NCBI RefSeq assembly: GCF_902713615.1
Contig: NC_052158.1
Coordinates: 35,009,990 to 35,073,989 of the forward strand
Length of the DNA stretch: 64,000 nt
Direction: 5' to 3'
From: Scyliorhinus canicula
Taxonomy: Eukaryota
Part shown: positions 1 through 31,129 of the stretch, one piece after another
How the letters are laid out: each line of letters opens with the position of its first letter
How positions within the stretch are numbered: the first letter of the stretch is position 1
Position numbers and translations under genes: made by a program
Notes under the pieces: generated by a model
The model's database searches: none
What the model was told of the DNA's origin: nothing
What the model saw: the letters and a program-made list of their open reading frames with translations, nothing else

Positions 1-162
1 TGGGCACAGTAAGAAACCTTACAACACCAGGATATGTCCAACAGGTTTGTTTTGAATCACTAGCTTTCGGAGCACAGCTCCTTCATCAGGTGATGTGCTC
101 CGAAATCTAGTGATTCGAAACAAACCTGTTGGACTTTAACCTGCTGTTGCAAGACTTCTTAC
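1..162 (-). mobile_element. Penelope-like element terminal remnant with inverted arm (unit 1)
   Basis: Arms of about 66 bp (gtaagaaacc...cggagcac and gtgctccga...cttcttac) flank a 19-nt loop. The same terminus recurs at 19298 and ~33900 next to hammerhead cores. Family assignment is from recognition, not a search. Confidence 0.7.
56..94 (-). ncRNA. Minimal type I hammerhead ribozyme motif
   Basis: Minus strand reads AUCAC CUGAUGA A GGAGC-UGU-GCUCC GAA AGCU A GUGAU: 5-bp stem I, intact core, 5-bp stem II, palindromic AGCU stem III and a CUA cleavage triplet. Confidence 0.75.
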
Positions 163-840
163 GATGGCAATGGGATATAGCCCGGGCCATGAGGTTGTGG
201 TTTTTCACAATTCAGCTCATGACCCACGGCACAGTATCTCATTATATGGCTCCGTGTCATAATTTTTTGATTTATGACACTGGTTTGAATTGCCTTGGCA
301 TGGTTTACTTTGCTAAAGGTACGATAGAAAGGAAAGTGGTTGTTACTGATATATACAGGATCTTCAGGGACCAAAGGACAAGGTCATAATAGGTAAAACC
401 TTGCGTCAGAACACAACGGGATACTATTAATTTTGATCACTGCGAGTCCCTTAGTTTTGTAATTATAATGTCTCCTTATCACGGTGTGTGAGAGTCCTCA
501 AGGAACAGAGGGAGGCTCTGTTGTTCCTGTGACTCCCGTTGGAAGCTCCCAGGACGGAGGGTCAATATTGGGCTTTGTGTGACCTGTAGCAGCCATCTTT
601 TAGTTTCACAAAAGATTTCACCCTCACCCTGGAGATTGTAGCAACTCCTGAAGGCAACTCAATTCCAACTGCCCACGGGCAAATTGTGAGGGGTAATACA
701 TTGACAACAATTTGTCTATTGTGTTTGCGGCAGTGACTTTAATTCAAAAGGACAAATGTTTGATCGAGTGAACACTGGGACCCCCTGAGGTGACGAAAGA
801 CACAATGCCAAAGTAAATTTGTTATTTCTTTCCCTTCCAG

Positions 841-1179
841 TCCCATTTACAGTGAAAGGGCCAGACTCCCTCACTGTGGCCCACTTGGGTGAGGATGTGG
901 TCCTCAGCTGTTTGGTGGTCCCCTTCACGCAGGACATGAAGCTGTGGGTCGAATGGAAGGATCTGGACACCAGAGCCACGATCCTGATGTGCGAGAGCGA
1001 TCGGACAGAGCCGTGCCAGGCCCTCGGGGGCAGAGCCCACCTCTTCGTGGGTCAGCCGGCGGCTGGAAACGTGTCAATCGGACTACGAGGGGTGAAGGAA
1101 TCTGACACTGGGACGTATCGGTGCACTGTCAGCTCCGATGGCCAGTCCAGCCACGTGGATATGGAGCTCACCGTTGTCG
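841..1179 (+). CDS. Butyrophilin-like gene, IgV exon copy 1 (113 codons, phase 1-1)
   Basis: Acceptor tttcccttccag, donor G|gtaag. Peptide FTVKGP...GEDVVLSC...W...GNVSI.L..V..SD.G.Y.C shows V-set and BTN/B7 motifs, with no stop. Confidence 0.92.
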
Positions 1180-1304
1180 GTAAGATGGTTGGTGTTAACT
1201 GTGGTGTGCCTGACCCTTACCCTAACCTCCCCCCCCCCCACCGCAATCAGTAACGATCGCCGAGTATTCTGCCGTCCTCGCCCCCGGCAACGACGAAAAT
1301 CAAA

Positions 1305-1481
1305 ATGAAATGAAAATGGCTTATTGTGACAAGCAGGCTTCAAGTGAAGTTACTGTGAAACGCCCATAGTCGCCACATTCCGGCGCCTGTTCCGGGAGGC
1401 TGGTACGGGAATTGAACTGTCCTGCTGGCCTATCTTGGTCTGTATTCAAAGCCAGCGATTTAGCCCTGTGCTAAACCAGCC
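1305..1481 (-). mobile_element. Short SINE-like element (copies at ~4625-4802, ~6815-6988, ~8220-8392)
   Basis: Minus-strand head ggggctggtttagcacag. It shares the 'gtcgccacattccggcgcctgttc...ttttcacagtaac' tail block with SINEs at ~17700 and ~47010. Confidence 0.65.
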
Positions 1482-2123
1482 CATCTCCATAATAAATAAA
1501 TCAATCCTTGAATATACATTACGCACCGGCGAGAAAAAGGAATATACTCTGACCCACTGGATACTTGAACCCCCAAGGATCTGCTCCCCCATCTCCTTCA
1601 TAAACACTGCCAATACCTCAAGACCCCCGCTCTCTTACTGGTCCACCCAATCCCCGCACATTCCATGTTACCATTCGGACTCTCTTCCCACCTCTCCCTC
1701 CTATCAGCCATGCCCACTCCATGGGGCATACCTAACCAGCCCCCCCGGCCCCCACCAACAACCTTCTAGGCCCACTGTTCTCCCAAAATGGCCCCTCCCA
1801 CCACCTGGCTCCCGCTCATTAGCCACCTTAAGTTTGCCAGCAAAGTGGCCCCACCAGAGCCCCTTCCCCCCGCCCCACGTACCGAACACAAAGACCATCA
1901 AAGAAACCACTCCCCACACAGCTCTTTTAAACAATCAAACATACTAAACACCACCCCAAGGGGAATAAAACCCGACCCGTTATCCCAACATCCCCAACCC
2001 AACCCCTCCCAACCACAACATAAGAAATTAAAGTTCAATCTCAGTTCAGTCCTTCAGCATTTACGATTGCCTGAGCCTTCACCGCCATCTCAAATAAATG
2101 TCCTTCGGTTTGAGGAAATGACG

Positions 2124-2313
2124 ATGTGGAGAAGCCGACGTTGATCTAGGGTGGGCACAGTAAGAAACCTTACAACACCAGGATAAGTCCAACAGGTTTG
2201 TTTTGAATCACTAGCTTTCGGAGCACAGCTCCTTCATCAGGTGATGTGCTCCGAAAGCTAGTGATTCGAAACAAATCTGTTGGACTTTAACCTGCTGTTG
2301 CAAGACTTCTTAC
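2124..2313 (-). mobile_element. Penelope-like remnant with inverted arm (unit 2)
   Basis: Same hairpin as 1-162, plus the terminal atgtggagaagccgacgttgatctagggtgggcacag. Confidence 0.7.
2207..2245 (-). ncRNA. Minimal hammerhead ribozyme motif (unit 2)
   Basis: Identical to 56-94. Confidence 0.75.
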
Positions 2314-2613
2314 GATGGCAATGGGATATAGGCCGGGCCATCAGGTTGTGGTTTTCACAATTCAGCTCATGACCCACGGCACAGTATCTCATTATATGGC
2401 TCCGTGTCATAATTTTTTGATTTATGACAGTTTGAATTGCCTTGGCATGGTTTACTCTGCTAAAGGTACTACAGAAAGGAAAGTGGTTGTTACTGATATA
2501 TACAGGATCTTCAGGGACCAAAGGACAAGGTCATAATAGGTAAAACCTTGCTTCGGAACACAACGGGATACTATTAATTTTGATCACTGCGAGTCCCTTA
2601 GTTTTGTAATTAT

Positions 2614-2845
2614 TATTTTTTTTTTTTTAATAAATTTAGATTACCCAATTATTTTTTCAATTAAGGGGCAATTTAGCGTGGCCAATCCACCTACTCTGCA
2701 CATCTTTGGGTTGTGGGGGTGAAACCCACGCAGACACGGGGAGAATGTGCAAACTCCACACGGACAGTGACCCAGAGCCGGGATCGAACCTGAGACCTCA
2801 GCGCCGTGAGGCAGTTGTGCTAACCACTAGGCCACCGTGCTGCCC
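2614..2845 (-). mobile_element. tRNA-derived SINE with A-rich tail and 15-bp target-site duplication
   Basis: Head gggcagcacggtggcctagtgg with A box, B box ggttcgatccc. TSD tagttttgtaattat at 2599-2613 and 2846-2860. Absent from units 1 and 3. Confidence 0.92.
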
Positions 2846-3234
2846 TAGTTTTGTAATTATAATGTCTCCTTATCACGGTGTGTGAGAGTCCTCAAGGAAG
2901 AGGGGGAAGCACTGTTGTTCCTGTGACTCCCTTTGGAAGCTCCCAGGACCTAGGGTCAATATTGGGCATTGTGTGACCTGTAGCAGCCATCTTTTAGTTT
3001 CAGAAAAGATTTCATCCTCACCCTGGAGATTGTAGCAACTCCTGAAGGCAACTCAATTCCACCTGCCCAAGGGCAAATTGTGAGGGGTAATACATTGACA
3101 AGAATTTGTCTGTTGTGTTTGCGGCAGTGACTTTAAATCAAAAGGACAAATGTTTGATCGAGTGAACACTGGGACCCCCTGAGGTGACGAAAGACACAAT
3201 GCCAAAGTAAATTTGTTATTTCTTTCCCTTCCAG

Positions 3235-3573
3235 TCCCATTTACAGTGAAAGGGCCAGACTCCCTCACTGTGGCCCACTTGGGTGAGGATGTGGTCCTCA
3301 GCTGTTTAGTGGTCCCCTTCACGCAGGACAGGAAGCTGTGGGTCGAATGGAAGGATCTGGACAACAAAGCCACGATCCTGACGTGCGAGAGCGATCGGAC
3401 AGAGCCGTGCCAGGCCCTCGGGGGCAGAGCCCACCTCTTCGTGGGTCAGCCGGCGGCTGGAAACGTGTCGATCGGACTACGAGGGGTGAAGAAATCTGAC
3501 GCTGGGACGTATCGGTGCACCGTCAGCTCGGATGGCCAGTCCAGCCACGTGGATATGGAGCTCGCCGTTGTCG
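3235..3573 (+). CDS. Butyrophilin-like gene, IgV exon copy 2
   Basis: Intact ag/gt, 339 nt, open frame. 11 nt differences from copy 1 (7 nonsynonymous, 4 synonymous by hand count). Confidence 0.9.
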
Positions 3574-3622
3574 GTAAGATGGTTGGTGTTAACTGTGGTG
3601 TGCCTGACCCTTACCCTAAACG

Positions 3623-3657
<35 letters not shown>

Positions 3658-5478
3658 ACCCAAAATCAGTGGCCAAGCATGCCAGCTCTAACTCAGTGGG
3701 TAGGCACTATCCCCTGAGATAGGAAGGTTACTGTTTTGTGTCCCACACTGGGCCGGTTAGTCAGTCAGTGCTGGGGAAACGAGAACATAGAATGTTGGGA
3801 AAAGCTTTGGGGGTTAGTAACACCTGTACGGGGTGAAAACAGAACTAATGTTTCCCGTCTGTCCTTAAACTCCACAGGTCCTGCCAGAACGGCTGAGATT
3901 TCCCTGGCTTTTCCTGTTTTTGTTTCAGATTCCAGCACCCGCAGTGCTTTGCTTATGTTAATGTTCTGGGAGGGGACACAGGTTCGATTCCCACCTCGTC
4001 AGCTGGTGGAAGTTAAATTTGAAAATTAATGACTTGAATGCTGGTTCAGCTGACGCTATCCGCTCTGCAATTCTTTTTTTTTAATATTTTAATTTGTTTT
4101 TTAACATTTCACACATAAAACAAAACACCCCCAACAAAAAGTATAGCAAAAGAATTCCTCCTTCTACCAACCACCCATATAGCTCAAACCACCCATCCCA
4201 AACCCCCCTCCCCCAAACCTACACCCCTCAGCAATTGACGGGAACCAACTCTTTAAAGTGAAGCATAAGTAGGCCCCATCTCTGATGGAACCCCTCAGTC
4301 ACTCCTTCTCAATATGCAGTAAGTCCATCAGGTTCCCCAGCCACACTGAGGCACAGGACCTCCACCCCAACAGGGCCCACCTTCAGCACCTCCTAAACCA
4401 CTGACAGCGCGACCTCCCCATTTGTATTGAACCTCACATAATCATCATTCACCTTTGCCACCCTAACACCAAAACACGGATCCGCGAGCAACCCCACATC
4501 CAACCTCCACACTGGCCTTTGTGCAGGCCCGTTCCCCAAGACCACATCCGCCTAGTGCGGAGCATGATCTGAAATAACGATCGCTGAGTATTCCGCCGTC
4601 CTCGCCCCCGACAACGATGAAAATGGAAATGAAAATCGCTTAGTGTCACAAGCAGTCTTCAAGTGAAGTTACTGTGAAACGCCCCTAGTCGCCACATTCC
4701 GGCGCCTGTTCCGGGAGGCTGGTATGGGAATTGAACTGTCCTGCTGGCCTGCCTTGGTCTGCTTTCAAAGCCAGCGATTTAGCCCTGTGCTAAACCAGCC
4801 CCTCTCCATAATAAATAAATCAATCCTTGAATATACATTACGCACCGGCGAGAAAAAGGAATATACTCTGACCCACTGGATACTTGAACCCCCAAGGATC
4901 TGCTCCCCCATCTCCTTCATAAACACTGCCAATACCTCAAGACCCCAGCTCTCTTACTGGTCAACCCAACCCCCGCACATTCCATGTTACCATTAGGACT
5001 CTCTTCCCACCTCTCCCTCCGATCAGCCATGACCACTCCATGGGGCATACCTAACCCCCCCCCACCAACAACCTTCTGGGCGCACCGTTCTCCCAAAATG
5101 GCCCCCGCCCCACCTGGCTCCCGCTCACTAGCCACCTTAAGTTTGCCAGCAAAGTGGCCCCACCAGAGCCCCCTCCCCCCGTCCCACGTACCGAACACAA
5201 AGACCATCAAAGAAACCACTCCCCACACAGCTCTTCTAAACAATCAAACATACTAAACACCACCCCAAGGGGAATAAAACCCGACCCATTATCCCTACAT
5301 CCCCAAGCCATTATCCCAACATCCCCAAGCCATTATCCCAACATCCCCAACCCAACCCCTTCCCAACCACAACATAAGAAATCAAACTTCAATCTCAGTT
5401 CAGTCCTTCAGCATTTACGATTGCCTGAGCCTTCACCGCCATCTCAAATAAATGTCCTTCGGTTTGATGGAAATGACA

Positions 5479-5668
5479 ATGTGGAGATGCCGACGTTGAT
5501 CTGGGGTGGGCACAGTAAGAAACCTTACAACACCAGGATAAGTCCAACAGGTTTGTTTCGAATCACTAGCTTTCGGAGCACAGCTCCTTCATCAGGTGAT
5601 GTGCTGCGAAAGCTAGTGATTCAAAACAAACCTGTTGGACTTTAACCTGCTGTTGCAAGACTTCTTAC
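5479..5668 (-). mobile_element. Penelope-like remnant with inverted arm (unit 3)
   Basis: Same as units 1 and 2. Confidence 0.7.
5562..5600 (-). ncRNA. Minimal hammerhead ribozyme motif (unit 3)
   Basis: Identical to 56-94. Confidence 0.75.
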
Positions 5669-6347
5669 GATGGCAATGGGATATAGTCCGGGCCATCAGG
5701 TTGTGGTTTTTCACAATTCAGCTCATGACCCACGGCACAGTATCTCATTATATGGCTCCGTGTCATAATTTTTTGATTTATGACACTGGTTTGAATTGCC
5801 TTGGCATGGTTTACTCTGCTAAAGGTACAATAGAAAGGAAAGTGGTTGTTACTGATATATACAGGATCCTCAGGAACCAAAGGACAAGGTCATAATAGGT
5901 AAAACCTTGCGTCGGAACACAACGGGATATTATTAATTTTGATCGCTGCGAGTCCCTTAGTTTTGTAATTATAATGTCTCCTTATCACGGTGTGTGAGAG
6001 TCCTCAAGGAAGAGGGGGAAGCTCTGTTGTTCCTGTGACTCGCGTTGGAAGCTCCCAGGACGGAGGGTCAATATTGGGCATTGTGTGACCTGTAGCAGCC
6101 ATCTTTTAGTTTCAGAAAAGATTTCACCCTCACCCTGGAGATTGTAGCAACTCCTGAAGGCAACTCAATTCCACCTGCCCAAGGGCAAATTGTGAGGGGT
6201 AATATATTGAAAAACTATTTGGCTGTTGTGTTTGCGGCAGTGACCTTAATTCAAAAGGACAAATGTTTGATCGAGTGAACACTGGGACCCCCTGAGGCAA
6301 CGAAAGACACAATGCCAAAGTAAATTTGTTATTTCTTTCCCTTCCAG

Positions 6348-6686
6348 TCCCATTTACAGTGAAAGGGCCAGACTCCCTCACTGTGGCCCACATGGGTGAG
6401 GATGTGGTCCTCAGCTGTTTGGTGGTCCCCTTCACGCAGGACATGAAGCTGTGGGTCGAATGGAAGGATCTGGACACCAGAGCCACGATCCTGATGTGCG
6501 AGAGCGATCGGACAGAGCCTTGCCAAGCCCTCGGGGGCAGAGCCCACCTCTTCGTGGGTCAGCCGGCGGCTGGAAATGTGTCGATCGGACTACGAGGGGT
6601 GAAGGAATCGGACGCTGGGACGTATCGGTGCACTGTCAGCTCCGTTGGCCAGTTCAGCCACGTGGATATGGAACTCGCCGTTGTCG
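6348..6686 (+). CDS. Butyrophilin-like gene, IgV exon copy 3
   Basis: Intact ag/gt, 339 nt, open frame. 11 nt differences from copy 1 (5 nonsynonymous, 6 synonymous by hand count). Confidence 0.9.
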
Positions 6687-7669
6687 GTAAGATGGTTGGT
6701 GTTAACTGTGGTGTGCCTGACCCTTACCCTAAAACCCCCCCCACCCGCAATCAGTAACGATCGCTGAGTATTCCGCCGTCCTCGCCCCCGGCAACGACGA
6801 AAATCAAAATGAAATGAAAATCGCTTATTGTCACAAGCAGGCTTCAAGTGAAGTTACTGTGAAACGCCCCTAGTCGCCACATTCCGGCGCCTGTTCGGGG
6901 AGGCTGGTACGGGAATTGAACTGTCCTGCTGGCCTGCCTTGGTCTGCTTTCAAAGCCAGCGATTTAGCCCTGTGCTAAACCAGCCCCTCTCCATAATAAA
7001 TAAATCAATCCTTGAATATACATTACGCACTGGCGAGAAAAAGGAATATACTCTGACCCACTGGATACTTGAACCCCCAAGGATCTGCTCCCCCATCTCC
7101 TTCATAAACACTGCCAATACCTCAAGACCCCCGCTCTCTTACTGGTTCACCCCAATCCCCGCACATTCCATGTTACCATTCGGACTCTCTTCCCACCTCT
7201 CCCTCCTATCAGCCATGCCCACTCCATGGGGCATACCTAAACGCTCCCCCCCCCACCCAAAATCAGTGGCCAAGCATGCCAGCTCTAAATCAGTGGGTAG
7301 GCACTATCCCCTGAGAAAAGAAGGTTACTGTTTTGTGTCCCACACTGGGCCGGTTAGTCAGTCAGCGCTGGGGAAACGAGAACAGAGAATGTTGGGAAAA
7401 GCTTTGGGGGTTAGTAACACCTGTACGGGGTGAAAACAGAGCTAACGTTTCCCGTCTGTCTTTAAACTCCACAGGTCCTGCCAGAACGGCTGAGATTCCC
7501 CTGGCGTTTCCTGTTTTTGTTTCAGATTCCAGCACCCGCAGTGCTTTGCTTATGTTAATGTTCTGGGAGGGGACACAGGTTCGAATCCCACCTCGTCAGC
7601 TGGTGGAAGTTAAATTTGAAAATTAATGACTTGAATGCTAGTTCAGCTGACGCTATCCGCTCTGCAATT

Positions 7670-10200
7670 CTTTTTTAAAAAAAATATTTTAATTTGTTTT
7701 TTAACATTTCACACATAAAACAAAACACCCCCAACAAAAAGTACAACAAAAGAATTCCTCCTTCTACCAACCACCCATATAGCTCAAACCACCCATCCCA
7801 AACCCCCCTCCCCCAAACCTACACCCCTCAGCAATTGACGGGAACCAACTCTTTAAAGTGAAGGATAAGTAGGCCCCATCTCTGATGGAACCCCTCAGTC
7901 ACACCTTCTCAATATGCAGTAAGTCCATCAGGTTCCCCAGCCACACTGAGGCACAGGACCTCCACCCCAACAGGGCCCACCTTCAGCACCTCCTAAACCA
8001 CTGACAGCGCGACCTCCCCATTTGTATTGAACCTCACATAATCATCATTCACCTTTGCCACCCTAACACCAAAACACGGATCCGCGAGCAACCCCACATC
8101 CAACCTCCACACTGGCCTTTGTGCAGGCCCGTTCCCCAAGACCACATCCGCCAAGTGCGGTGCAAGATCTGAAATAACGATCGCTGAGTATTCCGCCGTC
8201 CTCGCCCCCGACAACGATGAAAATGGCTTATTGTGACAAGCAGGCTTCAAGTGAAGTTACTGTGAAACGCCCCTAGTCGCCACATTCCGGCGCCTGTTCG
8301 AGGAGGCTGGTACGGGAATTGAACTGTGCTGCTGGCCTGCCTTGGTCTGTATTCAAAGCCAGCGATTTAGCCCTGTGCTAATCCAGCCCCTCCCCATAAT
8401 AAATAAATCAATCCTTGAATATACATTACGCACCGGCGAGAAAAAGGAATATACTCTGACCCACTGGATACTTGAACCCCCAAGGATCTGCTCCCCCATC
8501 TCCTTCATAAACGCTGCCAATACCTCAAGACCCCCGCTCTCTTACTGTCCACCCAATCCCCGCACATTCCATGTTACCATTCGGACTCTCTTCCCATCTC
8601 TCCCTCCTATCAGCCATGACCACTCCATGGGGCATACCTAACCCCCCCTCCCCCCGACCGACAACCTTCTAGGCCCACCGTTCTCCCAAAATGGCCCCCC
8701 GCCCCACCTCACAAATAGGACCAGGCCCTGCCCCAAGTCACTGTCAACCATCTACCCCTCCCCCCCACCCCCAATCCCAGAAATCCCCCAACCACTTCCT
8801 CTCGAAACTGCATACGCCCCGTCCCCCCCCACCAGTCACACCTCCCAGGCCCGCAGAAACCTGTCAACACAGTCTGGGCTGACCGCAGCCCCTCCCCCCA
8901 CCTGGCTCCCGCTCACTAGCCACCTTACGTTTGCCAGCGAAGTGGCCCCACCAGGGCCCCCTCCCCCCCACCCCACGTACCGAACACAAAGACCATCAAA
9001 GAAACCACTCCCCACACAGCTCTCCTAAACAATCAAACATACTAAACACCACCCCAAGGGGAATAAAACCCGACCCATTATCCCAACATCCCCAACCCAA
9101 CCCCTTCCCAACCACAACATAAGAAATCAAACTTCAATCTCAGTTCAGTCCCAGTCCTTCAGCTTTTACGATTGCCTGAGCCTTCTCCGCCATCTCAAAT
9201 AAATGTACTTCGAGTTGTAGGTAACTCTCTGCTTTGCTGGGTAGACCATCCAGAATTGAACATGACTCTTATACAGCACTGCCTTCGCTCTATTAAAGGC
9301 CGCCCACCGTTTTGCCAGCTCCACCGTGATGTCCTGGTATATACGAATACCACTGCCTTCCCTCACCTCTCGATTCTGCTTGGCACATCCCAAGACGTTC
9401 TCCTTCATCTGATAGCTGTGATCTGATAGGTGTGATCTGATAGCTGTGAAAACAGACTGTCACAGTTCTTGGTGGATCATTCATTTGGCTTCGGCCAGGG
9501 TGACCGATGAGCTCTATCCAGCTCAAAGAGGGAGGTGTTCTCCTTCTCCTCCCTCAATAACTTGGCAAACATCCCTGAAAAGTCTGCCTCAGGCCCTCCA
9601 GCCCCTCAGGCAGCCCCACAGTCCAACAATTCTGCCGCCGTGACCTGTTTTCCAGGTCCTCCACTTTGGCTCTCTCTCAGCGCTTTACTGCCCTCCACCT
9701 TCCGCAGCTCCTCTCCCATCGAGGAGAGCTGGTCACTGTGTCACGACGATGCCTCCTCTACCCCCTTCATCCCCTCACCATGCTCCCATACCATTCCCGA
9801 CGTCTTTACAAGAGCCTCCTTTATCGGGGCCAGCGTATCCTCCACCAGCTCTTTGAGCGTTCCCATCATCTCCATCTCATGTCGCTCCAAATACTTGGCA
9901 AACTGCCGCTCAAACTCCGCCGCCATCACCTCGGGTAGCGTGTCCACCGCAATGGGCACAACCCCACCCGGCGAGCTTGCTCCCAACATCTTTTCTCCCA
10001 CAGAACTCCGAACCAAACTCAGACCCCCAGGTGGACTAGCGCTCGTTCCTCTTCATGCCGTATTCTTTCATCGCGATTTCAACATCCTCTAATTCCCACA
10101 ACTTTACTGATGGCATCTTATTAGGGTTCCCCCTAAAACTAGATACAAGGGGTCAAAAAATGGGAACATTTGTGGGAGCCACCCTGCGACCTCCACCTGC
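7670..10200 (-). mobile_element. Internally deleted L1/Tx1-clade LINE (ORF1 remnants, pieces of ORF2, 3' tail)
   Basis: Minus ORFs 9741-10016 and 9166-9408 (GIRIYQDITVELAKR...KAVLYK...YPAK) resemble L1 ORF1. T-rich tail on the + strand at ~7670. Partial copies occur in units 1 and 2. Confidence 0.75.
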
Positions 10201-10212
10201 ATGTCATCGAAT

Positions 10213-10523
10213 CATAGAATTTACAGTGCAGATGGAGGCCATTCGGCCTATCGAGTCTGCACCGGTCCCCGGAAAGAGCACCCCCACTTAAGCCCACACC
10301 TCCACCCTACTCTTGTAACCCCACCCCTTTTTGGACACCTAGGGGCCATTTAGCATGGCCATTCCACCTAACCTGCACATCTTTGGACTGTGGGGGGAAA
10401 CCGGAGGAAACTCACTCACACACAGGGAGAACGTGCAGACTCCGTACAGACAGTGACCCAAGGCAGGAATCGAACCTGGGACCCTGGAGCTTTGAAGTAA
10501 CGGTGCTAACCACTGTGCTGTCA
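10213..10523 (-). mobile_element. tRNA-SINE
   Basis: Head with B box ccaggttcgattcc; tail ...gcactgtaaattctatg. Confidence 0.8.
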
Positions 10524-10563
10524 CCGGACGTTTGATTTGCCATCAGTAAGATCACGGTTGATC

Positions 10564-11190
10564 TGTGATGCGACCATCAATTCACACGAAACCAGGAGTA
10601 GAAGTAAACTGTGGCTTTAATCAACTAGAACAGCGCCTGCCTGCGACTGGTCTGCTAGTGGGAATCGCCTGCAGGGCGACTGCTCTTTATACCTCCCCTC
10701 AAGGGGTGGAGTGAGGGGCGGAGCCCACAGGCCCCAACATGCTACATCATAGGTAATACCATACAATGGTCCATAGGTGGAGCCCACATGGGAAACAGCG
10801 TAATACAGATAATCATATGGTGAATTGTTACAACAATACATTCACCACATTCACCCCCTGTTAAAAAAATGAAGTCCAGCAGGGGCGATGGGTTCATAAG
10901 TTCAGCCTGTCCGGCGCACGGATTGTGCGCTGTGAACTCCGAAGCTCTGCTGTTGCCGCTGGCCAGGGCGTCGAACCCGTCCGTGTTGGCATCGTTAGTG
11001 AAGTCGCCGGTGCGGGTACCGACGTGAACTCCGGGAGCATGTCTTCTGGAGCTTCATTCCTGTGGGTCGGTGAAGGAGGAATGGGGGGGGGGCGGGACGG
11101 GGTGGGGGTGCAGTGGTGGGCATCTGCAAGCTTGGGGTCGCGCCAATGCCAGGTCTGAAATGGGGAAATACTGAGCTGGTCGAAGGTGTC
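10564..11190 (-). mobile_element. Gypsy-like LTR retrotransposon 3' fragment (integrase tail, PPT, LTR at 10564-10849)
   Basis: Minus-strand LTR TGTGGTGAATG...GCATCACA, preceded by purine tract AGGGGGTGAA. The minus ORF ends LRSSQRTIRAPDRLNL*, typical of a Gypsy pol tail. Confidence 0.75.
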
Positions 11191-11361
11191 CCGCAGCGTG
11201 GGCCACCCAGTCTGTATTTGGTCTCTACAGCATAGAGTAGGCCGTGCTGTGGGCAGTGAAAATGGCACACTGAATCTGAAGGGGTACATTTACTTTGCGA
11301 TGGGTGAACCTGCACCTACGTCTTCCCTCTCGACTGAGCGGGCCATTCTGTTCTTTTCTAG

Positions 11362-11646
11362 CCTTCGGGACAAAGCCAGGTTTGTCGATAACGCAGTCCG
11401 ACGAGAACGTCGTCGCTTACGCTTGCCAGTCTGAGGGTTGGTACCCCGAACCTGGCATCACCTGGAAAGACGGCTTCGGAAACAGCCTGGTGCCACTGTC
11501 CACAATAACCAAAGTGAGAGACGAGCAGGGACTGTACAATGTGGACATCCAGTATCGGACAACTGATAGCGTTTCATCCACTGTGATCTGTATCATCTAC
11601 AACAAACTGGGCAATGTCAAGGAGATGTCGACTGCACATGTAATAG
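11362..11646 (+). CDS. Butyrophilin-like gene, IgC exon (95 codons, phase 1-1)
   Basis: Acceptor ttcttttctag, donor G|gtcagt. YACQSEGWYPEPGITW...GLYNV...VICII matches the BTN/B7 C-domain pattern and is in frame with any V exon. Confidence 0.92.
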
Positions 11647-11729
11647 GTCAGTGATTGCAACATTCAAAGCTTAACAGTAGTTTTTTTTTTAAATGTTAAG
11701 TTATTAAAAATAATAATTACATGTGAAAT

Positions 11730-12235
11730 GGGGGCAGAATGATGTCATTCAGCCCCTCGGATCTCCATCGCCATTCAGTAAGATCACAGCTGATCTATTG
11801 GTATTTCAAGCTCCACATTCCCATCTACCTCTCAATAACCTTTGATTCCTTTCTACAATCGGAATCTATCTTCCTCCACCTTAAAATTATTCAGTGACTC
11901 CGCCTCCGCCTCCACCTCCTTCTGAGGCAGAGTTCTAAAATCGCACAATTCTCCGAGAGAACAAAAATCTCTTCATCTCTGTCCTAAAAGAGTGACCCCC
12001 CTCATTTTAAAATAGTGCCCCCCTGATTCCGGACTCACCCACTAAGTGGAACATTCCTTTCCATGCCCACCTTGCGGAGACTGGTCAGTATCATATACAC
12101 TTCAATCAAGTCACCCCCTCACTTTTCTAAACTCCAGTGGAACAAGCCCAGTCTGTCCAACCTTTCCTCCTAAGACAACTGCTGATTCCAGGTATCAGTC
12201 TAGTAAACCTCCTCTGAACTGCCTCCAATGCATGT
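11730..12235 (-). mobile_element. CR1-like LINE 3' fragment
   Basis: Reverse complement resembles the CR1 3' region at 13612-14225 and 52000-52550. Confidence 0.6.
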
Positions 12236-12359
12236 AAATCACATGTAAATTGTCTGTTCCTGAAGTGAGGAGATGTGTTGGCTGTGTTTCAGGCCCTGCA
12301 TCAGCATTGAGCACAAACAGGTCAAATATAATATGACCTTAAATACTGTTACACAAATT

Positions 12360-12606
12360 GCCCCATCAAACACGCCCAGGACAGGTACAGCTCGGGGTTA
12401 GATACAGAGTAAAGCTCCCTCTATATGTCACTATCAAACATTCCCAGGACTGGTACAGCAGGGGGTTAGATACAGAGTAAAGCTCCTTCTACACCATCCT
12501 GCTCGGGGTTATATACAGAGTCAGGCTCCCCCTACACTGGCTCCATCAAACACTCCCAGGACAGGTACAGCTCGGGGTTATGTACAGAGTCAGGCTCCCT
12601 CTACAC
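12360..12606 (+). repeat. Degenerate tandem repeat with ~65-bp unit
   Basis: Recurring cccaggacaggtacagctcggggttagatacagagtaaagctcc. Confidence 0.8.
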
Positions 12607-12945
12607 CAGGGGTGGGCAAACTTTTCCGTGCAAGGGCCACATTCAGAAATTCACAATTTTAAAGGGCCGCATAGTATATTAAGTAAAATAATTACTTAAC
12701 CCGGTTATGATTCTGGGCGCCTCATATAGGACATAGAACAGTACAGCACAGAACAGGCCCTTCGGCCCTCGACGTTGTGCCGAGCAATGATCACCCTACT
12801 CAAGTCAACGTATCCACCCTATACCAGTAAGTAACCCAACAGCCCCCCCCATTAACCTTAAAAAAAAATAATAAAAAATTAAAAAAAAAAAAAAAATTTT
12901 TTTTTTTTTTAATGACTTGGTGGGCCGCATAAAGACCTTTGGCGG
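12607..12945. mobile_element. Truncated hAT-like MITE with a nested retroposon tail
   Basis: One TIR-like end, caggggtgggcaaactt. The matching end was not found. Confidence 0.5.
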
Positions 12946-13611
12946 ACGGCAGATTGTTTTAAAACCCCATCTGGATCTCTAATGTCCCCTGAAAAGCCGA
13001 GAAATCTGCCGTCCTTACCTGGTGAGGCCTACTTGGTGACTCTGGGCAAACAGCAATGAACAGAAGGACAATGCAGCAGCACATAGGAAAACTGCCACCT
13101 GGAAGTTCCCCTCCAAGCCACTCACCATCCTGACCGTTCCGTCACTGTGGCTGGGTCAATATCGTCTAACTCCCTCCCTAACAGCACAGTGGGTGTACAT
13201 CACATGGACCGCAGCACCACCACCTTCTCAAGGGGCAATTAGGGATGGGCTTAGCCAGTGACGCCCACGTTCCTGCAAATTAATTTTTTTCAAAGTGGCT
13301 CACTCTTAATTACCCTCCGAAAAGGCTCCATGAGACACCCAGTTTGTCAAACCACTACAAGGCCTATTCGCTGGGTACCAATGTGGCAAATGTTATTGTG
13401 GAGCAAAAAAATTAGCTAGCACGCTCCCGATTTCGACCTTTGCCTGCTCATGGGTTGGCAACGCAAATTGCTACCTGTCCTATTCCGTATCAACAGTGAA
13501 TGTTGAGTTATCGACCTTTGTGTGAGGCGTGGAAGCCCACGTCCATTAGGTTCCGTGGGTGACTGGGATGTGTTGCTGCGCCCCTGGAGGTGACTGAAAG
13601 AATAGCAGCTG

Positions 13612-14225
13612 CTTCATTCCCCTTGAGTACAAGAGTCAGCAGGTCATGTTACAGTTGATATGACTTTGGTTAGGCCACATTTGGAATACTGCTTGCAGTT
13701 CTGGTCGCCACATTACCAGAACGATGTGGATGCTTTAGAGAGGGTGCAGAGGAGGTTCACCAGGACGTTGCCTGGTATGGAGGGTGCTAGCTATGAAGAA
13801 AGGTTGAGTAGATTAGGATTGTTTTTGTTGGAAAGACGGAGGTTGAGGGGGGACCTGATTGTGGTCTACAAAATTATGAGAGGTATGGACAGGGTGGATA
13901 GCAACAAGCTTTTACCAAGAGTGGGGGTGTCAGTTACAAGGGGTCACGATTTCAAGGTGAGAGGGGGAAAGTTTAAGGGAGATGTGCATGGGAAGTTTTT
14001 TTACACAGAGGGTGGTGGGTGCCTGGAACGCTTTGCCAGCGGAGGTGGTAGAGCCGGGCACGATAGCATCATTTAAGATGCATCTAGACAGATATATGAA
14101 CGGGCGGGGAACAGAGGGAAGTAGATCCTTGGAAAATAGGCGACAGGTTTAGATAAAGGATCTGGATCGGCGCAGGCTGGGAGGGCCGAAGGGCCTGTTC
14201 CTGTGCTGTAATTTTCTTTGTTCTT
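13612..14225 (+). mobile_element. CR1 LINE 3' fragment
   Basis: ORF LVRPHLEYCLQFWSPHY...LERVQRRFTR...RGDLI is the CR1 ORF2 C-terminus. Tail ends (gttctt)n. Confidence 0.9.
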
Positions 14226-14324
14226 GTTCTTTGTTTGCCAGAGGGGTGCGGGGGCCTCAAGGCATCAACATCACCGGAGGCTTGGCAAAAGGAGCTTATT
14301 AATTCTCTCTTTAAACGTTTTCAG

Positions 14325-14363
14325 ATTTTCTTCCGCACGCTCAGTTTCGTGTGAGTGAGGCCG
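14325..14363 (+). CDS. Butyrophilin-like gene, 39-nt exon (DFLPHAQFRVSEA, phase 1-1)
   Basis: Acceptor ttttcag, donor G|gtaaga; preserves the frame between IgC and the 27-nt exon. Confidence 0.7.
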
Positions 14364-14465
14364 GTAAGATTTGTTTTCGTCCCCTGATTTAAAAAAAAAC
14401 TCTGTCTTTGTGTTCACCAGCCTCAATATTGACCCTTGGCCACTGTCACATATTTTCTTTTGCAG

Positions 14466-14492
14466 AATGGAGTAGAATTCGCAGTTTCCAGG
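14466..14492 (+). CDS. Butyrophilin-like gene, 27-nt pre-B30.2 exon (EWSRIRSFQ)
   Basis: Acceptor ttttcttttgcag, donor G|gtaagc. A 27-nt phase 1-1 'EW...' exon immediately before B30.2 is typical of BTN genes. Confidence 0.85.
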
Positions 14493-15031
14493 GTAAGCGG
14501 ACAGTGCAGGAACGGAGTGAGGTACTGGGGAGGTTTTGCTGTGAGTTCCCAACACACACACACACTGCTCGGGTGAAGAAAACTGGCCAGGCCTCAAAGG
14601 AGCAGGGCAAATGGTAGCAAAGTGGTCATATTACTGGACTAGCGAGTCAGAGGCCTAGACTAATGACCTACAGACATGAGTTCATGACTAAATGAAGGAA
14701 AAACTCAGCTGCGACGCCTCCGTAAGTTGAAGAGTCTCCTAACGTTCGCTGTCCGAACTCTCATGCGGCTGACCGAAGGGGAGAGTCCAGCTTAACCGGT
14801 CTGCACAGCGGAGAAAGCGAGGGTAGCTATCAGAGAACCAATTGGAAATGCGTTTCCAAAGAATGTAATTCTGCAATAACTACCGAAGTATGTACAAGTC
14901 TACCTCGTAGACCTGTGGCTCTGGTGTTGGCCTCCAAGGCCAGATGCCAAATTGTAAATTATGCTTCAATTGTACAAAGCCTTGGGCAGACCCCACCTGG
15001 GGAACTAGATTCAGTTTTAGGAACGGTATAT

Positions 15032-15250
15032 ATTTAAAAAAATTTAGAGTACCCAATTCATTTTTTCCATTTAAGGGGCAATTTAGCATGGCAAATCCAC
15101 CTAGCCTGTGCATCTTTGGGTTGTGGGAGCGAAACAACAAGGGGAGAATGTGCAAACTCCGCACGAACAGTGACCCGGAGCCGGGATCGAATCTGGGACC
15201 TCGGTGCCGTGAGGCGGCAGTTCTATCCACTGTGCCACCGTGCTGTCTTA
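15032..15250 (-). mobile_element. tRNA-SINE, short A-tailed type
   Basis: Same family as 2614-2845. Similar copies at ~18420-18645, 32412-32635, 36885-37108 and 41003-41190. Confidence 0.8.
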
Positions 15251-15839
15251 GGGAGGGTATATTGACGCAGGTTCACCAGAAAGGTGGCAGGGTGAAAAGG
15301 GTTCAATGATGAGGACAGGCTGCAGGAACATCTGTTCCCCCGACTTCAGAATGCTGAGATGTGACCTCCATAGAATCCCTACGGTGCGCAAGGAGGCCAT
15401 TCGCCCCATCAATTCTGCACCAACCCAACTGGAAGAGCACCCTACCTAGGCCGACTCCAGTGCCCTATTCCCAAAACCCCACCTAACCTGCACATCTTTG
15501 GACTGTGGGAGGAAATCAGAGCACCCGGAGGAAACCCACACAGACACGGGGAGAAAGTGCAAACTCCACACAGTCCCCCAAGGTTGGAATTGAACCCGGG
15601 TCCCTAGCGCATTGAGCAACAGTGTCGAGAGGATTCGAGTGGAAGGATAGTTTGCAACAATTTGCTCGGGTGGACAAGTTAAGAACAAAGGGCGATTGAG
15701 TTAAAACATTGATTTGGGATGTTCAGGAGGGAAATCGGGAAGCGCATTAGCTCACAAGAGGAGAGCAGAAATCTATAAATTGTTTCCTCAAAATGCTGTG
15801 GACGCTAGATTTGGGGGGGGGGGGGGTGGGGGGAGAAAC

Positions 15840-16540
15840 ATAGAAACTGGGAAAAAGAGTGGGCCATTCTGCCCTTTGGACCTGCTCTGCTGTTCATTAT
15901 GATCGTGGCTGATCCTCCATCTCAAAGCCATATTTACGCTTTCTCCCCATAACCCTTGATGCCGTTAAAATTTAAACAAAATCGATCTCTTTCTTGAACA
16001 CTTTCAGTGTTTTGGCCTGCACAGCCTCTAGTGATAGAGAATTCCACAGGTTCACCATCCTCTGAGTGAAGAAATGTCTCCTCATCTCAGTCCTGAATAG
16101 TCTATCCTGTATCCTGAGACTGTCCCCTGGTTCTAGATTTCCCCAATCAGGAAAAACATCCTCCCTGCATCTAGTCTGTCCAGACCAGTTAGAATTTTAG
16201 ACGTTTCAATCAGATCTCCTCTCCTCCTTCTGAACTCCGGTGAATAGAGGCCCATTCGAACCAATCTCTCCTCATAGGACAGTCACGCCAACCCCGGTAT
16301 CAGCCTAGTGAACCTCCGCTGCACTCCCTCTGTGGCAAATACATTCTTTCTGAGGTGGGAGACCATAACTGCACGAAATACTCCAGGTATGGTCTCACCA
16401 AGGCCCTGTATAACTTCAGTAAGATATCCCTAATTCTGAACTCAAATCCTCTCGCAATGAAGGCCGCCATACCATTTACCTTACTAATTGCTTGCTGCAC
16501 CTGCCTCTCCACTTTCATTGACTGGTGTACAAGGGAACAG
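15840..16540 (-). mobile_element. CR1 LINE 3' fragment
   Basis: Minus ORF LLKLYRALVRPYLEYFVQLWSP. Confidence 0.85.
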
Positions 16541-16645
16541 TTGAAGTTTTAAAGACTATTCATCGATAGATTTCTTTCCTGAATTGGAGTTAAATTAATT
16601 GTTTGTTTATCTCTCTCTCCCCCCCCCCCTCTCTTTCCATTTCAG

Positions 16646-17258
16646 TTTCTTTGACTCTGGATCCAGACACAGCGAATCCTTGGCTCATCCTGTCAGACGG
16701 GGGCACCAGCGTGTCGGACAGTAACGAGCGGCAGCATCTCCCTGAAATCCCAAGAGGTTCCTGGTCAGTCACTGTGTGCTGGCCTCTGGGGGCTTTGCCG
16801 CAGGCAAGCACTACTGGGAGACGGAGGTGGGCCATAAGGACACCTGGGACCTGGGCCTGGCCAGCGAGACGGTCAGTAGGAAGGGCAAGGTCAAAGGGGT
16901 GCCCGGGGCTGGGCACTGGAGCCTGAGCCTCAGCAAGACGGAGTACCAGGCTGTGGACTCGCCACCCCGGGCCTTGCCGCTGGGTCAGAACCCGACAGTG
17001 GTTGGCGTTTACCTCAACTACGAGCGGGGACAGGTGTCCTTCTTCGACGCGGGGGGCCAGCTGCACCTGTATACCTTCGCTGTCAACTTCACCAAGAGGC
17101 TGTATCCCTTCTTCTGCCCGGGATTACACAACTGGCAGAAGAACGCTGAACCCCTCCATCTTCGCAACCGCAAGCCATTGAGAATGGAACCAGGGTGGAT
17201 GTTGTGGAATGATGCAAGGTTGAGTGGAGGGGGGTCACATGCGGGAGTGCGAGCCTGA
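16646..17258 (+). CDS. Butyrophilin-like gene, terminal B30.2 (PRY-SPRY) exon with a 1-bp frameshift at 16745-16747
   Basis: Acceptor ccatttcag. VSLTLDPDTANPWL...LPE in one frame, VLASGGFAAGKHYWETEVG...VGVYLNYERGQVSFFD...LYPFFCPG in the next. One extra A restores LPENPKRFLVSHCVLASG and the correct length. Confidence 0.88.
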
Positions 17259-23003: not shown

Positions 23004-23736
23004 GGTTCAGAGGAGACTGGGTGATTTACCGAAATGGAGCCCAAACCCCAGAGCCCCGATATGCACAGGAACGCAGATCAGTTAGGGAGAGGTTGGATAG
23101 ACTGGGGTTGCTTTCCTGAGACCAGAGGCGGCGAAGGGATGACCGAATCGGGGTGTAGAAAATTATGAGGGGCCTAGACAGGGCAGACAGGAAAGACCTA
23201 TTTCCCCGAGCTGACTGTTCAATGACCAGGGGAATGAAGAAATGTGATTGGCAGAAGGAATGAGACGGGTCCCAAGATAAAATATTTTCATCTCGTGGAG
23301 GAAGGTAGGGCAGCGAGGGTGGGTGGGCCGGGCGGAGAAGGTGGGGCGGCAAAGGGGGGGGGGGGGAGTGGGGTAGCGAGGGGGGGGAGTCGGGTAGCGA
23401 GGGGGGGGGGGGGGGGGGAGGAGATAGGGCGGAGGGGGGGTCGTGAGTGGTGTAGGTGGGGGTGTCTTGTAGGCCTGGCCACAGAGGATGTAGGCCTGGT
23501 GGTGGGTGTATGGGGGAAGGCTCATAGGCCGGCGGGGGCGGTAAGTGGTGCAGGCCGGGGCGGGGTGGGGTTGGGATGTCCCTCTCGGGAGGTGGGGGAG
23601 ACGAGGGTAAATCATTTGGAGTTTCGCCAGGGGAAACGGTGCCCTGGATTTCACGTCATATTTGAAGATAAGGATGTTTCCTATTAACCCAAAAAGGACA
23701 GATAGTGGCCTCTATTTAAGGTCAGTCCTGCCCATG

Positions 23737-30981: not shown

Positions 30982-31129
30982 GTCCCTGCATTGGAGGCCT
31001 CAACATGAATTGTGTCCCAAATGTCTCTTGAATGGGCCTTGAACCACCTTCTTCAGATGAAAGTGTGATGAATGAAGCCACGGGTACCACAAGGGCTTCC
31101 CCACCTATCTGAAAACATGGGGCTGGGGG

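What the first reader, a model, noticed from the sequence alone, without database searches (positions are those of the whole stretch)
841..6686. Array of intact, interchangeable IgV cassette exons feeding one IgC-B30.2 gene
Seen: three 339-nt IgV exons, each with intact acceptor and donor, phase 1-1, no stops and ~97% nt identity, upstream of a single IgC exon and a single B30.2 exon. Only the V exon and its intron were duplicated. Established: butyrophilins normally have one IgV plus one IgC. Inference: the locus could encode V-V-V-C or choose one V per transcript (a variable/constant design like Dscam or clustered protocadherins). The window starts inside a unit, so more V exons may lie upstream.
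Basis: partly seen in the sequence, partly recalled or inferred. Interest (0 to 1): 0.82.

Follow-up and report, generated by a model that had tools for sequence, protein, structure and literature searches.

The report
Catshark butyrophilin-like gene, four IgV exons
A small-spotted catshark butyrophilin-like immune gene has copied its first immunoglobulin exon four times in a row, and public RNA data suggest the copies are spliced in series rather than chosen one at a time, so this looks like a young exon duplication and not a new diversity-generating system.

Summary
Window 841-1179, 3235-3573 and 6348-6686 are intact 339-nt phase 1-1 IgV exons, 95-97% identical, upstream of one butyrophilin-type IgC exon and one PRY-SPRY exon. 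A fourth copy lies 1.3 kb before the window, and the array ends there.

The genome is Scyliorhinus canicula. RefSeq already models this locus as an 874-aa V-V-V-V-C-B30.2 protein, XP_038673049.1, misnamed "LOW QUALITY PROTEIN: hemicentin-1-like". Seven other elasmobranch orthologues, and a paralogue 70 kb downstream, have one V.

All three unit junctions are identical. That fits one founding tandem duplication followed by unequal crossing-over. Exon divergence equals intron divergence and pN/pS averages about 0.5, so the exons' intactness is what young copies show by chance.

RNA-like contigs from three studies show a V3-to-IgC splice. Only V3 and the paralogue's V feed the IgC exon. Several other V variants are present without intron, and V depth exceeds IgC depth. 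This favours serial inclusion. No V-to-V junction was shown directly.

Dscam-like or protocadherin-like one-V choice is not supported. As assembled, the B30.2 exon has a 1-nt homopolymer frameshift. Whether that is a PacBio CLR assembly error or decay is unresolved.

The parts
841..1179 (+). IgV exon V1. It is the second of four; V0 lies outside the window at G000:C13:35008683-35009021.
   Evidence: 339 nt, phase 1-1, no stop. Pfam V-set E 1.4e-10. It matches residues about 200-312 of XP_038673049.1.
3235..3573 (+). IgV exon V2
   Evidence: 339 nt, phase 1-1, no stop. Pfam V-set E 7.7e-10. It shares four letters with the paralogue's V (positions 74, 130, 133, 148), giving a mosaic pattern.
6348..6686 (+). 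IgV exon V3, the last copy and the one spliced to IgC
   Evidence: 339 nt, phase 1-1. The GT..AG joint 6686->11362 appears in contigs of X1, X3 and X7. A contig identical to V3 over 6580-6685, including its private letters, runs into IgC in X1 and X3.
2101..2114 (.). Duplication junction between units 1 and 2. The same junction occurs near 5455-5470 and about 60 nt before the window.
   Evidence: Its left side matches the ancestral V-to-C intron (window ~9190-9207). Its right side matches the ancestral upstream flank. The two share an imperfect ~14-nt microhomology. All three junctions are identical.
11362..11646 (+). IgC exon (285 nt, phase 1-1)
   Evidence: Pfam C2-set_3, the butyrophilin Ig-C domain, E 6.3e-18. 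Acceptor ttttctag, donor gtcagt. Covered by RNA-like contigs of 357-1258 nt.
14325..14363 (+). Linker exon 1 (39 nt)
   Evidence: Maps to residues about 634-646 of XP_038673049.1. AG/GT bounded. Conserved in the orthologue alignment.
14466..14492 (+). Linker exon 2 (27 nt with the orthologue-like donor; RefSeq's model uses a donor at 14540)
   Evidence: The short form reproduces the orthologues' '...SFQV|SLTLDP'.
16646..17258 (+). B30.2 (PRY-SPRY) exon, frameshifted as assembled
   Evidence: PRY E 9.5e-13 in one frame (16648-16746) and SPRY E 1.2e-21 in another (16746-17255).
16745..16747 (+). Frameshift site. AAA here, against AAAA in the paralogue and the conserved LPENP(E/K)RF in orthologues.
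   Evidence: Alignment of the two B30.2 exons and the orthologue alignment. RefSeq flags the protein LOW QUALITY. No run was listed for the 60-mer spanning the site, but only 2 words were sampled.

Best explanation
This is a young, lineage-specific tandem amplification of the IgV exon inside one of two copies of an elasmobranch butyrophilin-like gene. One founding duplication of about 3.3 kb (roughly 0.9 kb of upstream intron, the V exon and about 2 kb of downstream intron) joined the V-to-C intron back to the intron upstream of V, at a short imperfect microhomology. Unequal crossing-over between units then raised the count to four, and gene conversion and deletions produced mosaic units of 2.15-3.36 kb. 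The exon is symmetrical (phase 1-1, 339 = 3 x 113) and all copies kept the same acceptor and donor, so the spliceosome treats them as ordinary constitutive exons. The main mRNA is therefore E1-E2-E3-V0-V1-V2-V3-IgC-linker-B30.2, giving a protein with four IgV domains in series where relatives have one. Shown: the anatomy, the shared junction, the single-V state of relatives, the V3-to-IgC splice, expression of several V variants, and V depth above IgC depth. Inferred: that V-to-V splices exist, and that the extra domains lengthen the Ig part and multiply its putative binding face. No evidence shows that selection has yet acted on the extra copies.
For: Four V exons lie in tandem and a fifth lies in the paralogue 70.6 kb downstream. 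All unit junctions are identical, with microhomology. Units are 92-97% identical and the array starts 2.2 kb before the window. RefSeq XP_038673049.1 (874 aa) is exactly V0-V1-V2-V3-C-linker-B30.2. Orthologues in Scyliorhinus torazame, Mustelus, Cetorhinus, Heterodontus, Pristiophorus, Hemiscyllium and Mobula are 490-527 aa with one V. RNA-like contigs of three studies cover the exons but not the unique intron, and all show the joint 6686->11362. In all three runs the shared IgC contig begins 6 nt before the V end, so its feeders diverge at V position 333, the paralogue-specific base. A V3-private contig runs 24 nt into IgC in X1 and X3. Five to eight further contigs carry the non-V3 letter at 6610. 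Depth of the collapsed V contig against the IgC contig is 78 vs 33, 30 vs 18.5 and 196 vs 101. One V per transcript cannot give that, whereas four V in the window gene plus one in the paralogue predicts it (for X1, 4 x 19.8 / 32.6 = 2.4; observed 2.4). Introns of 2.1, 2.8 and 4.7 kb, uniform GT-AG sites and an in-frame exon length leave no steric, spliceosome-type or NMD basis for mutual exclusion.
Against: No V-to-V junction was displayed. The read laying tables were truncated. Contigs over the V start run 13-29 nt into a single upstream sequence whose letters were not shown. With both E3-to-V and V-to-V junctions present, a strict unitig would stop at the exon edge, so this is unexplained. 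Contig depth is a poor quantitative measure. V3's private letters at 6392, 6520 and 6526 were absent from all three runs, so individuals differ from the reference or bubbles were collapsed. Logan contigs drop rare branches, so minor skipping isoforms cannot be excluded. If the B30.2 frameshift and the stop-loss are real, the four-V copy may be decaying and its product irrelevant.
Confidence: 0.62

Rival explanations
1. Ordinary cassette skipping. All four V exons are usable, but the transcripts form a ladder of isoforms with one to four V domains, always ending in V3 before IgC.
For: Observed V:IgC depth ratios vary (1.2-2.4 for the 5' contig), and X3 falls below the value expected for full inclusion. 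Human CD276 makes both 2Ig and 4Ig isoforms from its duplicated exons (PMC3172298).
Against: No E3-to-V1, V2 or V3 junction, or other skipping junction, was displayed. Identical splice sites give no reason for differential use.
Confidence: 0.2
2. Decaying gene copy. The four-V copy is an expressed pseudogene with a real B30.2 frameshift and stop-loss, and the exon array is a neutral by-product of relaxed constraint.
For: There is a 1-nt deletion at 16745-16747 relative to the paralogue and to the conserved LPENP(E/K)RF of orthologues. A TAG>TTG stop-loss adds 28 residues. Variable-site density is 8.3% in the exon against 7.4-11.5% in the introns. N:S is 17:10, not different from neutral (p = 0.10). 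Chance intactness is about 0.14.
Against: The paralogue carries a different single-base homopolymer frameshift, so if both were real the species would have no intact copy of a gene conserved across sharks and rays. The assembly is PacBio CLR polished with Arrow and FreeBayes, which is prone to such errors in near-identical duplicates. No run was listed as holding the words across the AAA site, whereas 18 hold V3 words; this is weak, as only 2 words were sampled. Mean pN/pS is about 0.5.
Confidence: 0.3
3. Regulated choice of one V per transcript, by mutually exclusive splicing as in Dscam1 or by promoter choice as in clustered protocadherins.
For: There is a tandem array of same-size, same-phase homologous exons upstream of constant exons. 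A C-rich tract 40-70 nt after each V donor is complementary to a G-rich tract at 11064-11109, about 270 nt before the IgC acceptor. Replacements lean towards the FG loop (4 of 16 in 9 residues, p = 0.035).
Against: Only V3 and the paralogue's V feed IgC in three runs, and V depth exceeds IgC depth. The V exons have no start codon or leader of their own; three shared 5' exons lie upstream. The only complementarity found is low-complexity polyC:polyG. pN/pS is below 1 in nine of ten pairs.
Confidence: 0.05
4. Assembly artefact. The repeated units are an over-expansion of one V unit.
For: The assembly is based on PacBio CLR. PolyC tract lengths after the V exons differ widely.
Against: The copies differ at 28 sites in mosaic patterns. 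Units differ by kilobase-scale indels and a SINE insertion. RNA of other studies holds a V3-private contig plus 5-8 other local V haplotypes, more than two single-V genes can give. There are no N runs in the region.
Confidence: 0.03

Closest known systems
4Ig-B7-H3 (CD276) tandem Ig-exon duplication in mammals (PMC3172298)
   Same: A B7/butyrophilin-superfamily gene gained extra Ig domains by tandem duplication of in-frame Ig exons within the gene. The duplicates are nearly identical and are spliced in series into a longer ectodomain. The change is lineage-specific. CD276 is also a sequence hit of the Ig part.
   Different: In CD276 the unit is a V-C exon pair duplicated once, giving VCVC. Here only the V exon is amplified, to four copies, giving VVVVC. 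This gene also carries a B30.2 domain and an unusual N-terminal anchor.
Butyrophilins BTN2A1, BTN3A1/A3, BTNL3/8 (solved structures)
   Same: Best solved-structure matches by sequence, E 1e-55 to 1e-43, over both the Ig part and the B30.2 part. The IgC exon hits the butyrophilin-specific Pfam C2-set_3. NCBI names the orthologues butyrophilin subfamily 1 member A1-like, BTNL2, BTNL9 or ERMAP-like.
   Different: Butyrophilins have a signal peptide, one IgV, one IgC, a transmembrane helix and then a cytoplasmic B30.2. Here no hydrophobic segment lies between IgC and B30.2. Instead there are two at the N-terminus (residues ~25-45 and ~59-83), in all elasmobranch orthologues checked.
Dscam1-type clusters of mutually exclusive exons
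   Same: A tandem array of homologous Ig-encoding exons of equal length and phase.
   Different: In Dscam1 exactly one exon per cluster is included, enforced by docking-selector RNA pairing (my own knowledge). Here V depth exceeds the constant exon's depth, only the last V reaches IgC, and no specific docking-selector pair was found.
Clustered protocadherins / UGT1A variable-first-exon loci
   Same: Several similar 'variable' exons lie upstream of shared 'constant' exons.
   Different: In those loci each variable exon is a first exon with its own promoter and start codon, spliced directly to the constant exons (my own knowledge). Here the V exons are internal, start in phase 1 at an acceptor, and share three upstream exons.

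Membership tests
Butyrophilin (BTN/BTNL) family | N-terminal IgV domain | tested here: met
   Pfam V-set E 1e-9 to 1e-10 for V1-V3. Canonical C23, W38 and C94 are present in the translations.
Butyrophilin (BTN/BTNL) family | Membrane-proximal butyrophilin-type IgC domain | tested here: met
   Pfam PF22705 C2-set_3, E 6.3e-18, 65 bits against a cut-off of 27.
Butyrophilin (BTN/BTNL) family | Single transmembrane helix between IgC and B30.2, placing B30.2 in the cytoplasm | tested here: not met
   The linker between IgC and PRY is only about 23-39 residues. No 19-residue window with Kyte-Doolittle mean of 1.6 or more lies after residue 115 in P0001, or after residue 84 in four orthologues. The hydrophobic segments lie at about 25-45 and 59-83.
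Butyrophilin (BTN/BTNL) family | C-terminal B30.2 (PRY-SPRY) domain | tested here: inconclusive
   PRY and SPRY are both recognised but lie in different frames as assembled. Orthologues are intact. Whether the frameshift is real could not be settled.
Tandem Ig-exon duplication of the 4Ig-B7-H3 kind | Near-identical Ig exons repeated in tandem inside one gene, in frame | tested here: met
   Four 339-nt phase 1-1 exons, 95-97% identical, with one shared duplication junction.
Tandem Ig-exon duplication of the 4Ig-B7-H3 kind | Duplicates are included together in the mRNA | tested here: inconclusive
   This is supported indirectly by the RefSeq model with four V, by V depth 1.6-2.4 times IgC depth, and by non-V3 variants in spliced RNA. 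No V-to-V junction was displayed.
Mutually exclusive exon cluster (Dscam1 type) | Exactly one exon of the array per transcript | tested here: not met
   V depth exceeds IgC depth in three runs. The only feeders of IgC are V3 and the paralogue's V. Rare isoforms are not excluded.
Mutually exclusive exon cluster (Dscam1 type) | Docking site and per-exon selector sequences that pair | tested here: inconclusive
   The inverted-repeat scan found only polyC (after the V donors) against a G-rich tract at 11064-11109, plus TE-derived pairs. Because the units are young, conservation cannot be used to test this.
Variable-first-exon locus (clustered protocadherin type) | Each variable exon has its own promoter, start codon and leader | tested here: not met
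   Each V exon begins at an AG acceptor in phase 1 with no ATG-led leader. The shared 5' exons E1-E3 map 5-23 kb upstream.

The most novel reading that the evidence does not exclude
The IgV array is a copy-number-variable, partly alternatively included module. Individuals and tissues would then make isoforms with one to four V domains whose FG and C'C'' loops differ, giving a germline-encoded, tunable recognition surface on a butyrophilin-like protein whose Ig and B30.2 domains lie on the same side of the membrane.
Probability: 0.1. Interest if true: 0.6.

Novelty: new member of a known kind. Interest (0 to 1): 0.3.

Why it matters
Tandem duplication of symmetrical Ig exons is the textbook route by which immunoglobulin-superfamily receptors gain domains. 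This locus catches that process early: four copies, one shared breakpoint, still about 96% identical, expressed, and with a single-V paralogue 70 kb away as a built-in control. That makes it a useful natural example for comparative immunologists and for gene annotators, since RefSeq calls it 'hemicentin-1-like'. It does not open a new mechanism of receptor diversification. The evidence points away from regulated one-V choice. The host gene family may be the more interesting object: it is conserved across sharks and rays and has no membrane span between IgC and B30.2.

Tried and rejected
1. Looked for short proteins called on transcript contigs that would show a V-V junction. The search for homologous proteins with the V3 domain found only two word-sharing candidates and none scored.
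2. Searched runs with a 60-mer centred on the frameshift. Only 2 words were sampled and none was listed, so this is weak evidence.
3. Scanned 1-12000 against Rfam at gathering thresholds.
4. Searched for docking-selector pairing. Only low-complexity polyC:polyG and transposon-derived inverted repeats turned up.
5. Tested for selection. pN/pS is 0.26-1.06; N:S is 17:10 (p = 0.10); loop enrichment is 8 of 16 (p = 0.07), with the FG loop at p = 0.035. These are too few changes to claim purifying or diversifying selection.
6. Searched the literature for catshark butyrophilins. Nothing on this gene was found.
7. Rejected the protocadherin analogy because no leader or ATG lies inside the unit.
8. 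Rejected an assembly artefact because copy-private letters recur in RNA of other studies.
9. The raw-read run X24 gave only a handful of reads on the V exon and none on IgC, so it yielded no junction counts.
Full report
**What is in the sequence**

Exact-match scans find the same acceptor context and the same donor context three times in the window. They bound exons at 841-1179, 3235-3573 and 6348-6686. Each exon is 339 nt and open in one frame only. That frame is phase 1 at both ends. Pairwise identities are 96.8%, 96.8% and 95.3%.

Pfam calls all three V-set. It calls the exon at 11362-11646 the butyrophilin-type Ig-C domain (PF22705, E 6e-18). It finds PRY plus SPRY in the exon at 16646-17258.

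**Two corrections to the observation**

A search of the whole assembly finds five copies of the V exon, all on this chromosome:
- The three copies in the window.
- A fourth, V0, at G000:C13:35008683-35009021, 1.3 kb before the window.
- A fifth, Vp, 77 kb after the window start.

Homology to the repeat unit begins about 2.2 kb before the window and does not continue further upstream. The array therefore has four members.

The second correction concerns the B30.2 exon. PRY and SPRY lie in different frames. The cause is an A-run of three at 16745-16747, where the paralogue has four and where all orthologues read LPENP(E/K)RF.

**Identity of the locus**

An exhaustive profile search with the V3 domain returns one 874-aa protein. 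It is 96% identical to the query over its four matched stretches. It is XP_038673049.1, 'LOW QUALITY PROTEIN: hemicentin-1-like' of Scyliorhinus canicula, on a contig of the same length as this one.

Its sequence is V0-V1-V2-V3-IgC-linker-B30.2, preceded by 87 residues. Mapping it back to the genome gives:
- Three 5' exons at about -23.2 kb, -17.6 kb and -5.1 kb from the window start.
- Two small linker exons at 14325-14363 and 14466-14492 (or to 14540).

The model skips the frameshift, which explains the 'LOW QUALITY' flag. The closest solved structures by sequence are full-length BTN3A3, BTN2A1 and BTN3A1, with E about 1e-55.

**Relatives have one V**

Orthologues are 490-527 aa and have a single V. 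They come from Scyliorhinus torazame, Mustelus asterias, Cetorhinus maximus, Heterodontus francisci, Pristiophorus japonicus, Hemiscyllium ocellatum and Mobula.

The window's gene is one half of a tandem segmental duplication of about 70.6 kb. That duplication also carries a TRIM gene on the minus strand. The downstream copy has one V, one IgC and one B30.2 exon. The amplification is therefore specific to this copy in this lineage.

**How the array arose**

The three unit-to-unit junctions are the same sequence. Its left half matches the ancestral V-to-C intron (window ~9190-9207, and the paralogue). Its right half matches the ancestral intron upstream of V. The two ancestral sequences share an imperfect ~14-nt stretch at the breakpoint.

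One founding duplication of about 3.3 kb, followed by unequal crossing-over, explains four units with one junction type. The units now measure 2.15-3.36 kb because of a ~0.9-kb deletion or insertion and a SINE insertion. Letters shared between V2 and Vp, and between V0 and V2, show later exchange between copies.

**Is intactness informative?**

It is not. The exons differ by 2.4-5.9% and the adjoining 392 nt of intron differ by 3.1-4.6%. Variable-site density is 8.3% in the exon and 7.4-11.5% in the flanks.

pN/pS ranges from 0.26 to 1.06. The N:S count of 17:10 does not differ from the neutral expectation (p = 0.10). Given the observed numbers of changes, the chance that five copies escape stops and indels is roughly 0.14.

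Replacements lean towards the loops. Four of 16 fall in the nine FG-loop residues (p = 0.035), with loops defined from the C23, W38 and C94 landmarks. This is a hint only.

**RNA evidence**

Eighteen runs from eight studies hold words of V3. I laid three contig runs from three studies, plus one raw-read run, on 6300-11700.

The contig runs behave as RNA. The exons are covered, the unique intron reads 0, and only transposon segments pile up.

- **V3-to-IgC splice.** All three contig runs show the joint 6686->11362 with GT..AG ends, in two contigs each.
- **V3-private contig.** In X1 and X3, one contig is identical to V3 over 6580-6685, including its private letters. It continues 24 nt into IgC.
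- **Feeders of IgC.** In all three runs, the contig that covers IgC starts 6 nt before the V end. The feeders of IgC therefore diverge at V position 333, the one base near the 3' end that separates Vp from V0-V3. If V0, V1 or V2 were also joined to IgC, the V3 contig would have broken earlier, at position 326 or 330.
- **Other V variants.** At 6610, five to eight further contigs carry the non-V3 letter.
- **Depth.** The collapsed V contig is deeper than the IgC contig: 78 vs 33 in X1, 30 vs 18.5 in X3, and 196 vs 101 in X7.

With the X1 junction depths (19.8 for V3-to-C, about 12.8 for the other), four V per transcript predicts a ratio of 2.4. One V per transcript predicts 0.6. The observed ratio is 2.4.

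This favours serial inclusion, but it has limits:
- No V-to-V joint appeared in the truncated tables.
- Contig depth is a rough measure.
- Contigs over the V start run 13-29 nt into an upstream sequence that was not printed.
- V3's private letters at 6392, 6520 and 6526 were absent from all three runs.
- The raw-read run had almost no reads on the gene.

**Why one-V choice is unlikely on anatomy alone**

- The V exons are internal and have no start codon or leader of their own, so the protocadherin design does not apply.
- The introns are 2.1-4.7 kb, all sites are GT-AG and identical, and the exon length is a multiple of three. Steric hindrance, spliceosome incompatibility and frame-dependent decay therefore cannot enforce exclusion. 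This step rests on my own knowledge of those mechanisms.
- The inverted-repeat scan found only a polyC tract after each donor, complementary to a G-rich tract at 11064-11109.

**Is the gene alive?**

This is unresolved. The window copy has the A-run frameshift and a TAG>TTG stop-loss that adds 28 residues. The paralogue has a different one-base C-run frameshift.

The assembly is PacBio CLR with Arrow and FreeBayes polishing. Two homopolymer indels against four substitutions in 99%-identical duplicates look more like polishing errors than biology. No run was listed for the 60-mer across the AAA site, but only two words were sampled. I put about 60% on assembly error.

**Comparison and verdict**

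The nearest precedent is the tandem Ig-exon duplication that created 4Ig-B7-H3 in many mammals (PMC3172298). It differs in that the duplicated unit there is a V-C pair, duplicated once.

The locus is butyrophilin-like by sequence but fails one defining feature of the family: there is no membrane span between IgC and B30.2. I found no paper on this gene.

Overall this is a real, expressed, young exon amplification that is already implicit in RefSeq. It is a new example of a known process, not a new variable/constant system.

Noticed in passing
window 16745-16747, and the paralogue's B30.2 exon at about window +87.64 kb (L012): The two 99%-identical B30.2 exons each carry a different single-base homopolymer frameshift: AAA vs AAAA here, and GGGCCC vs GGGCC in the paralogue. 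If both were real the species would have no intact copy of this gene. The assembly is PacBio CLR based.
   Followed up: partly
window ~17170-17258: The window copy reads TTG where the paralogue has the TAG stop, at the point where orthologues end. This extends the reading frame by 28 residues.
   Followed up: partly
G000:C13:34992342-34992455 and 35004882-35004998 (exons E2 and E3, upstream of the window); window 11647-16645: The gene family has two N-terminal hydrophobic segments (residues ~25-45 and ~59-83, the second followed by an NGS site). It has no hydrophobic segment between IgC and B30.2. This holds in the catshark and in four orthologues tested from sharks and a ray, so Ig and B30.2 would lie on the same side of the membrane.
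   Followed up: partly
window 36-136, 2185-2287, 5540-5642: Each duplication unit carries a ~103-nt near-perfect hairpin (47-49-nt arms, 5-nt loop) about 700-800 nt upstream of its V exon. No Rfam family, hammerhead included, matched at gathering thresholds in 1-12000.
   Followed up: partly
window 1230-1240, 3621-3665, 6727-6735 and 11064-11109: A polyC tract of very different length (about 11, 45 and 8 C) follows each V donor by 40-70 nt. It is complementary to a G-rich tract about 270 nt before the IgC acceptor. This is low-complexity, and no effect on splicing was seen.
   Followed up: partly
window 6392, 6520, 6526: V3's private letters in its 5' half are absent from the RNA contigs of all three runs, while its private letters in the 3' half are present in two. 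The cause could be allelic mosaics, gene conversion or bubble collapse in the contigs.
   Followed up: no
window 38054-39475 (-), 46022-46462 (-), 48000-48509 (-): A TRIM gene lies on the minus strand, with a RING/B-box exon, a coiled-coil exon and a PRY-SPRY exon. The PRY-SPRY open frame runs on for about 290 more residues of hydrophobic repeat. A second copy lies in the downstream half of the 70.6-kb duplication (window +92.8 to +93.4 kb).
   Followed up: no
window 23700-31000, 31400-32230, 52500-57960: There are three long minisatellite arrays that are open in several frames on both strands. They read as 'LSTDPLTVQHS'-type, 'PRPRHSHS'-type and 'HPHFTHT'-type repeats when translated. LINE reverse-transcriptase fragments lie at 42007-42996 and 51245-52475.
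   Followed up: no
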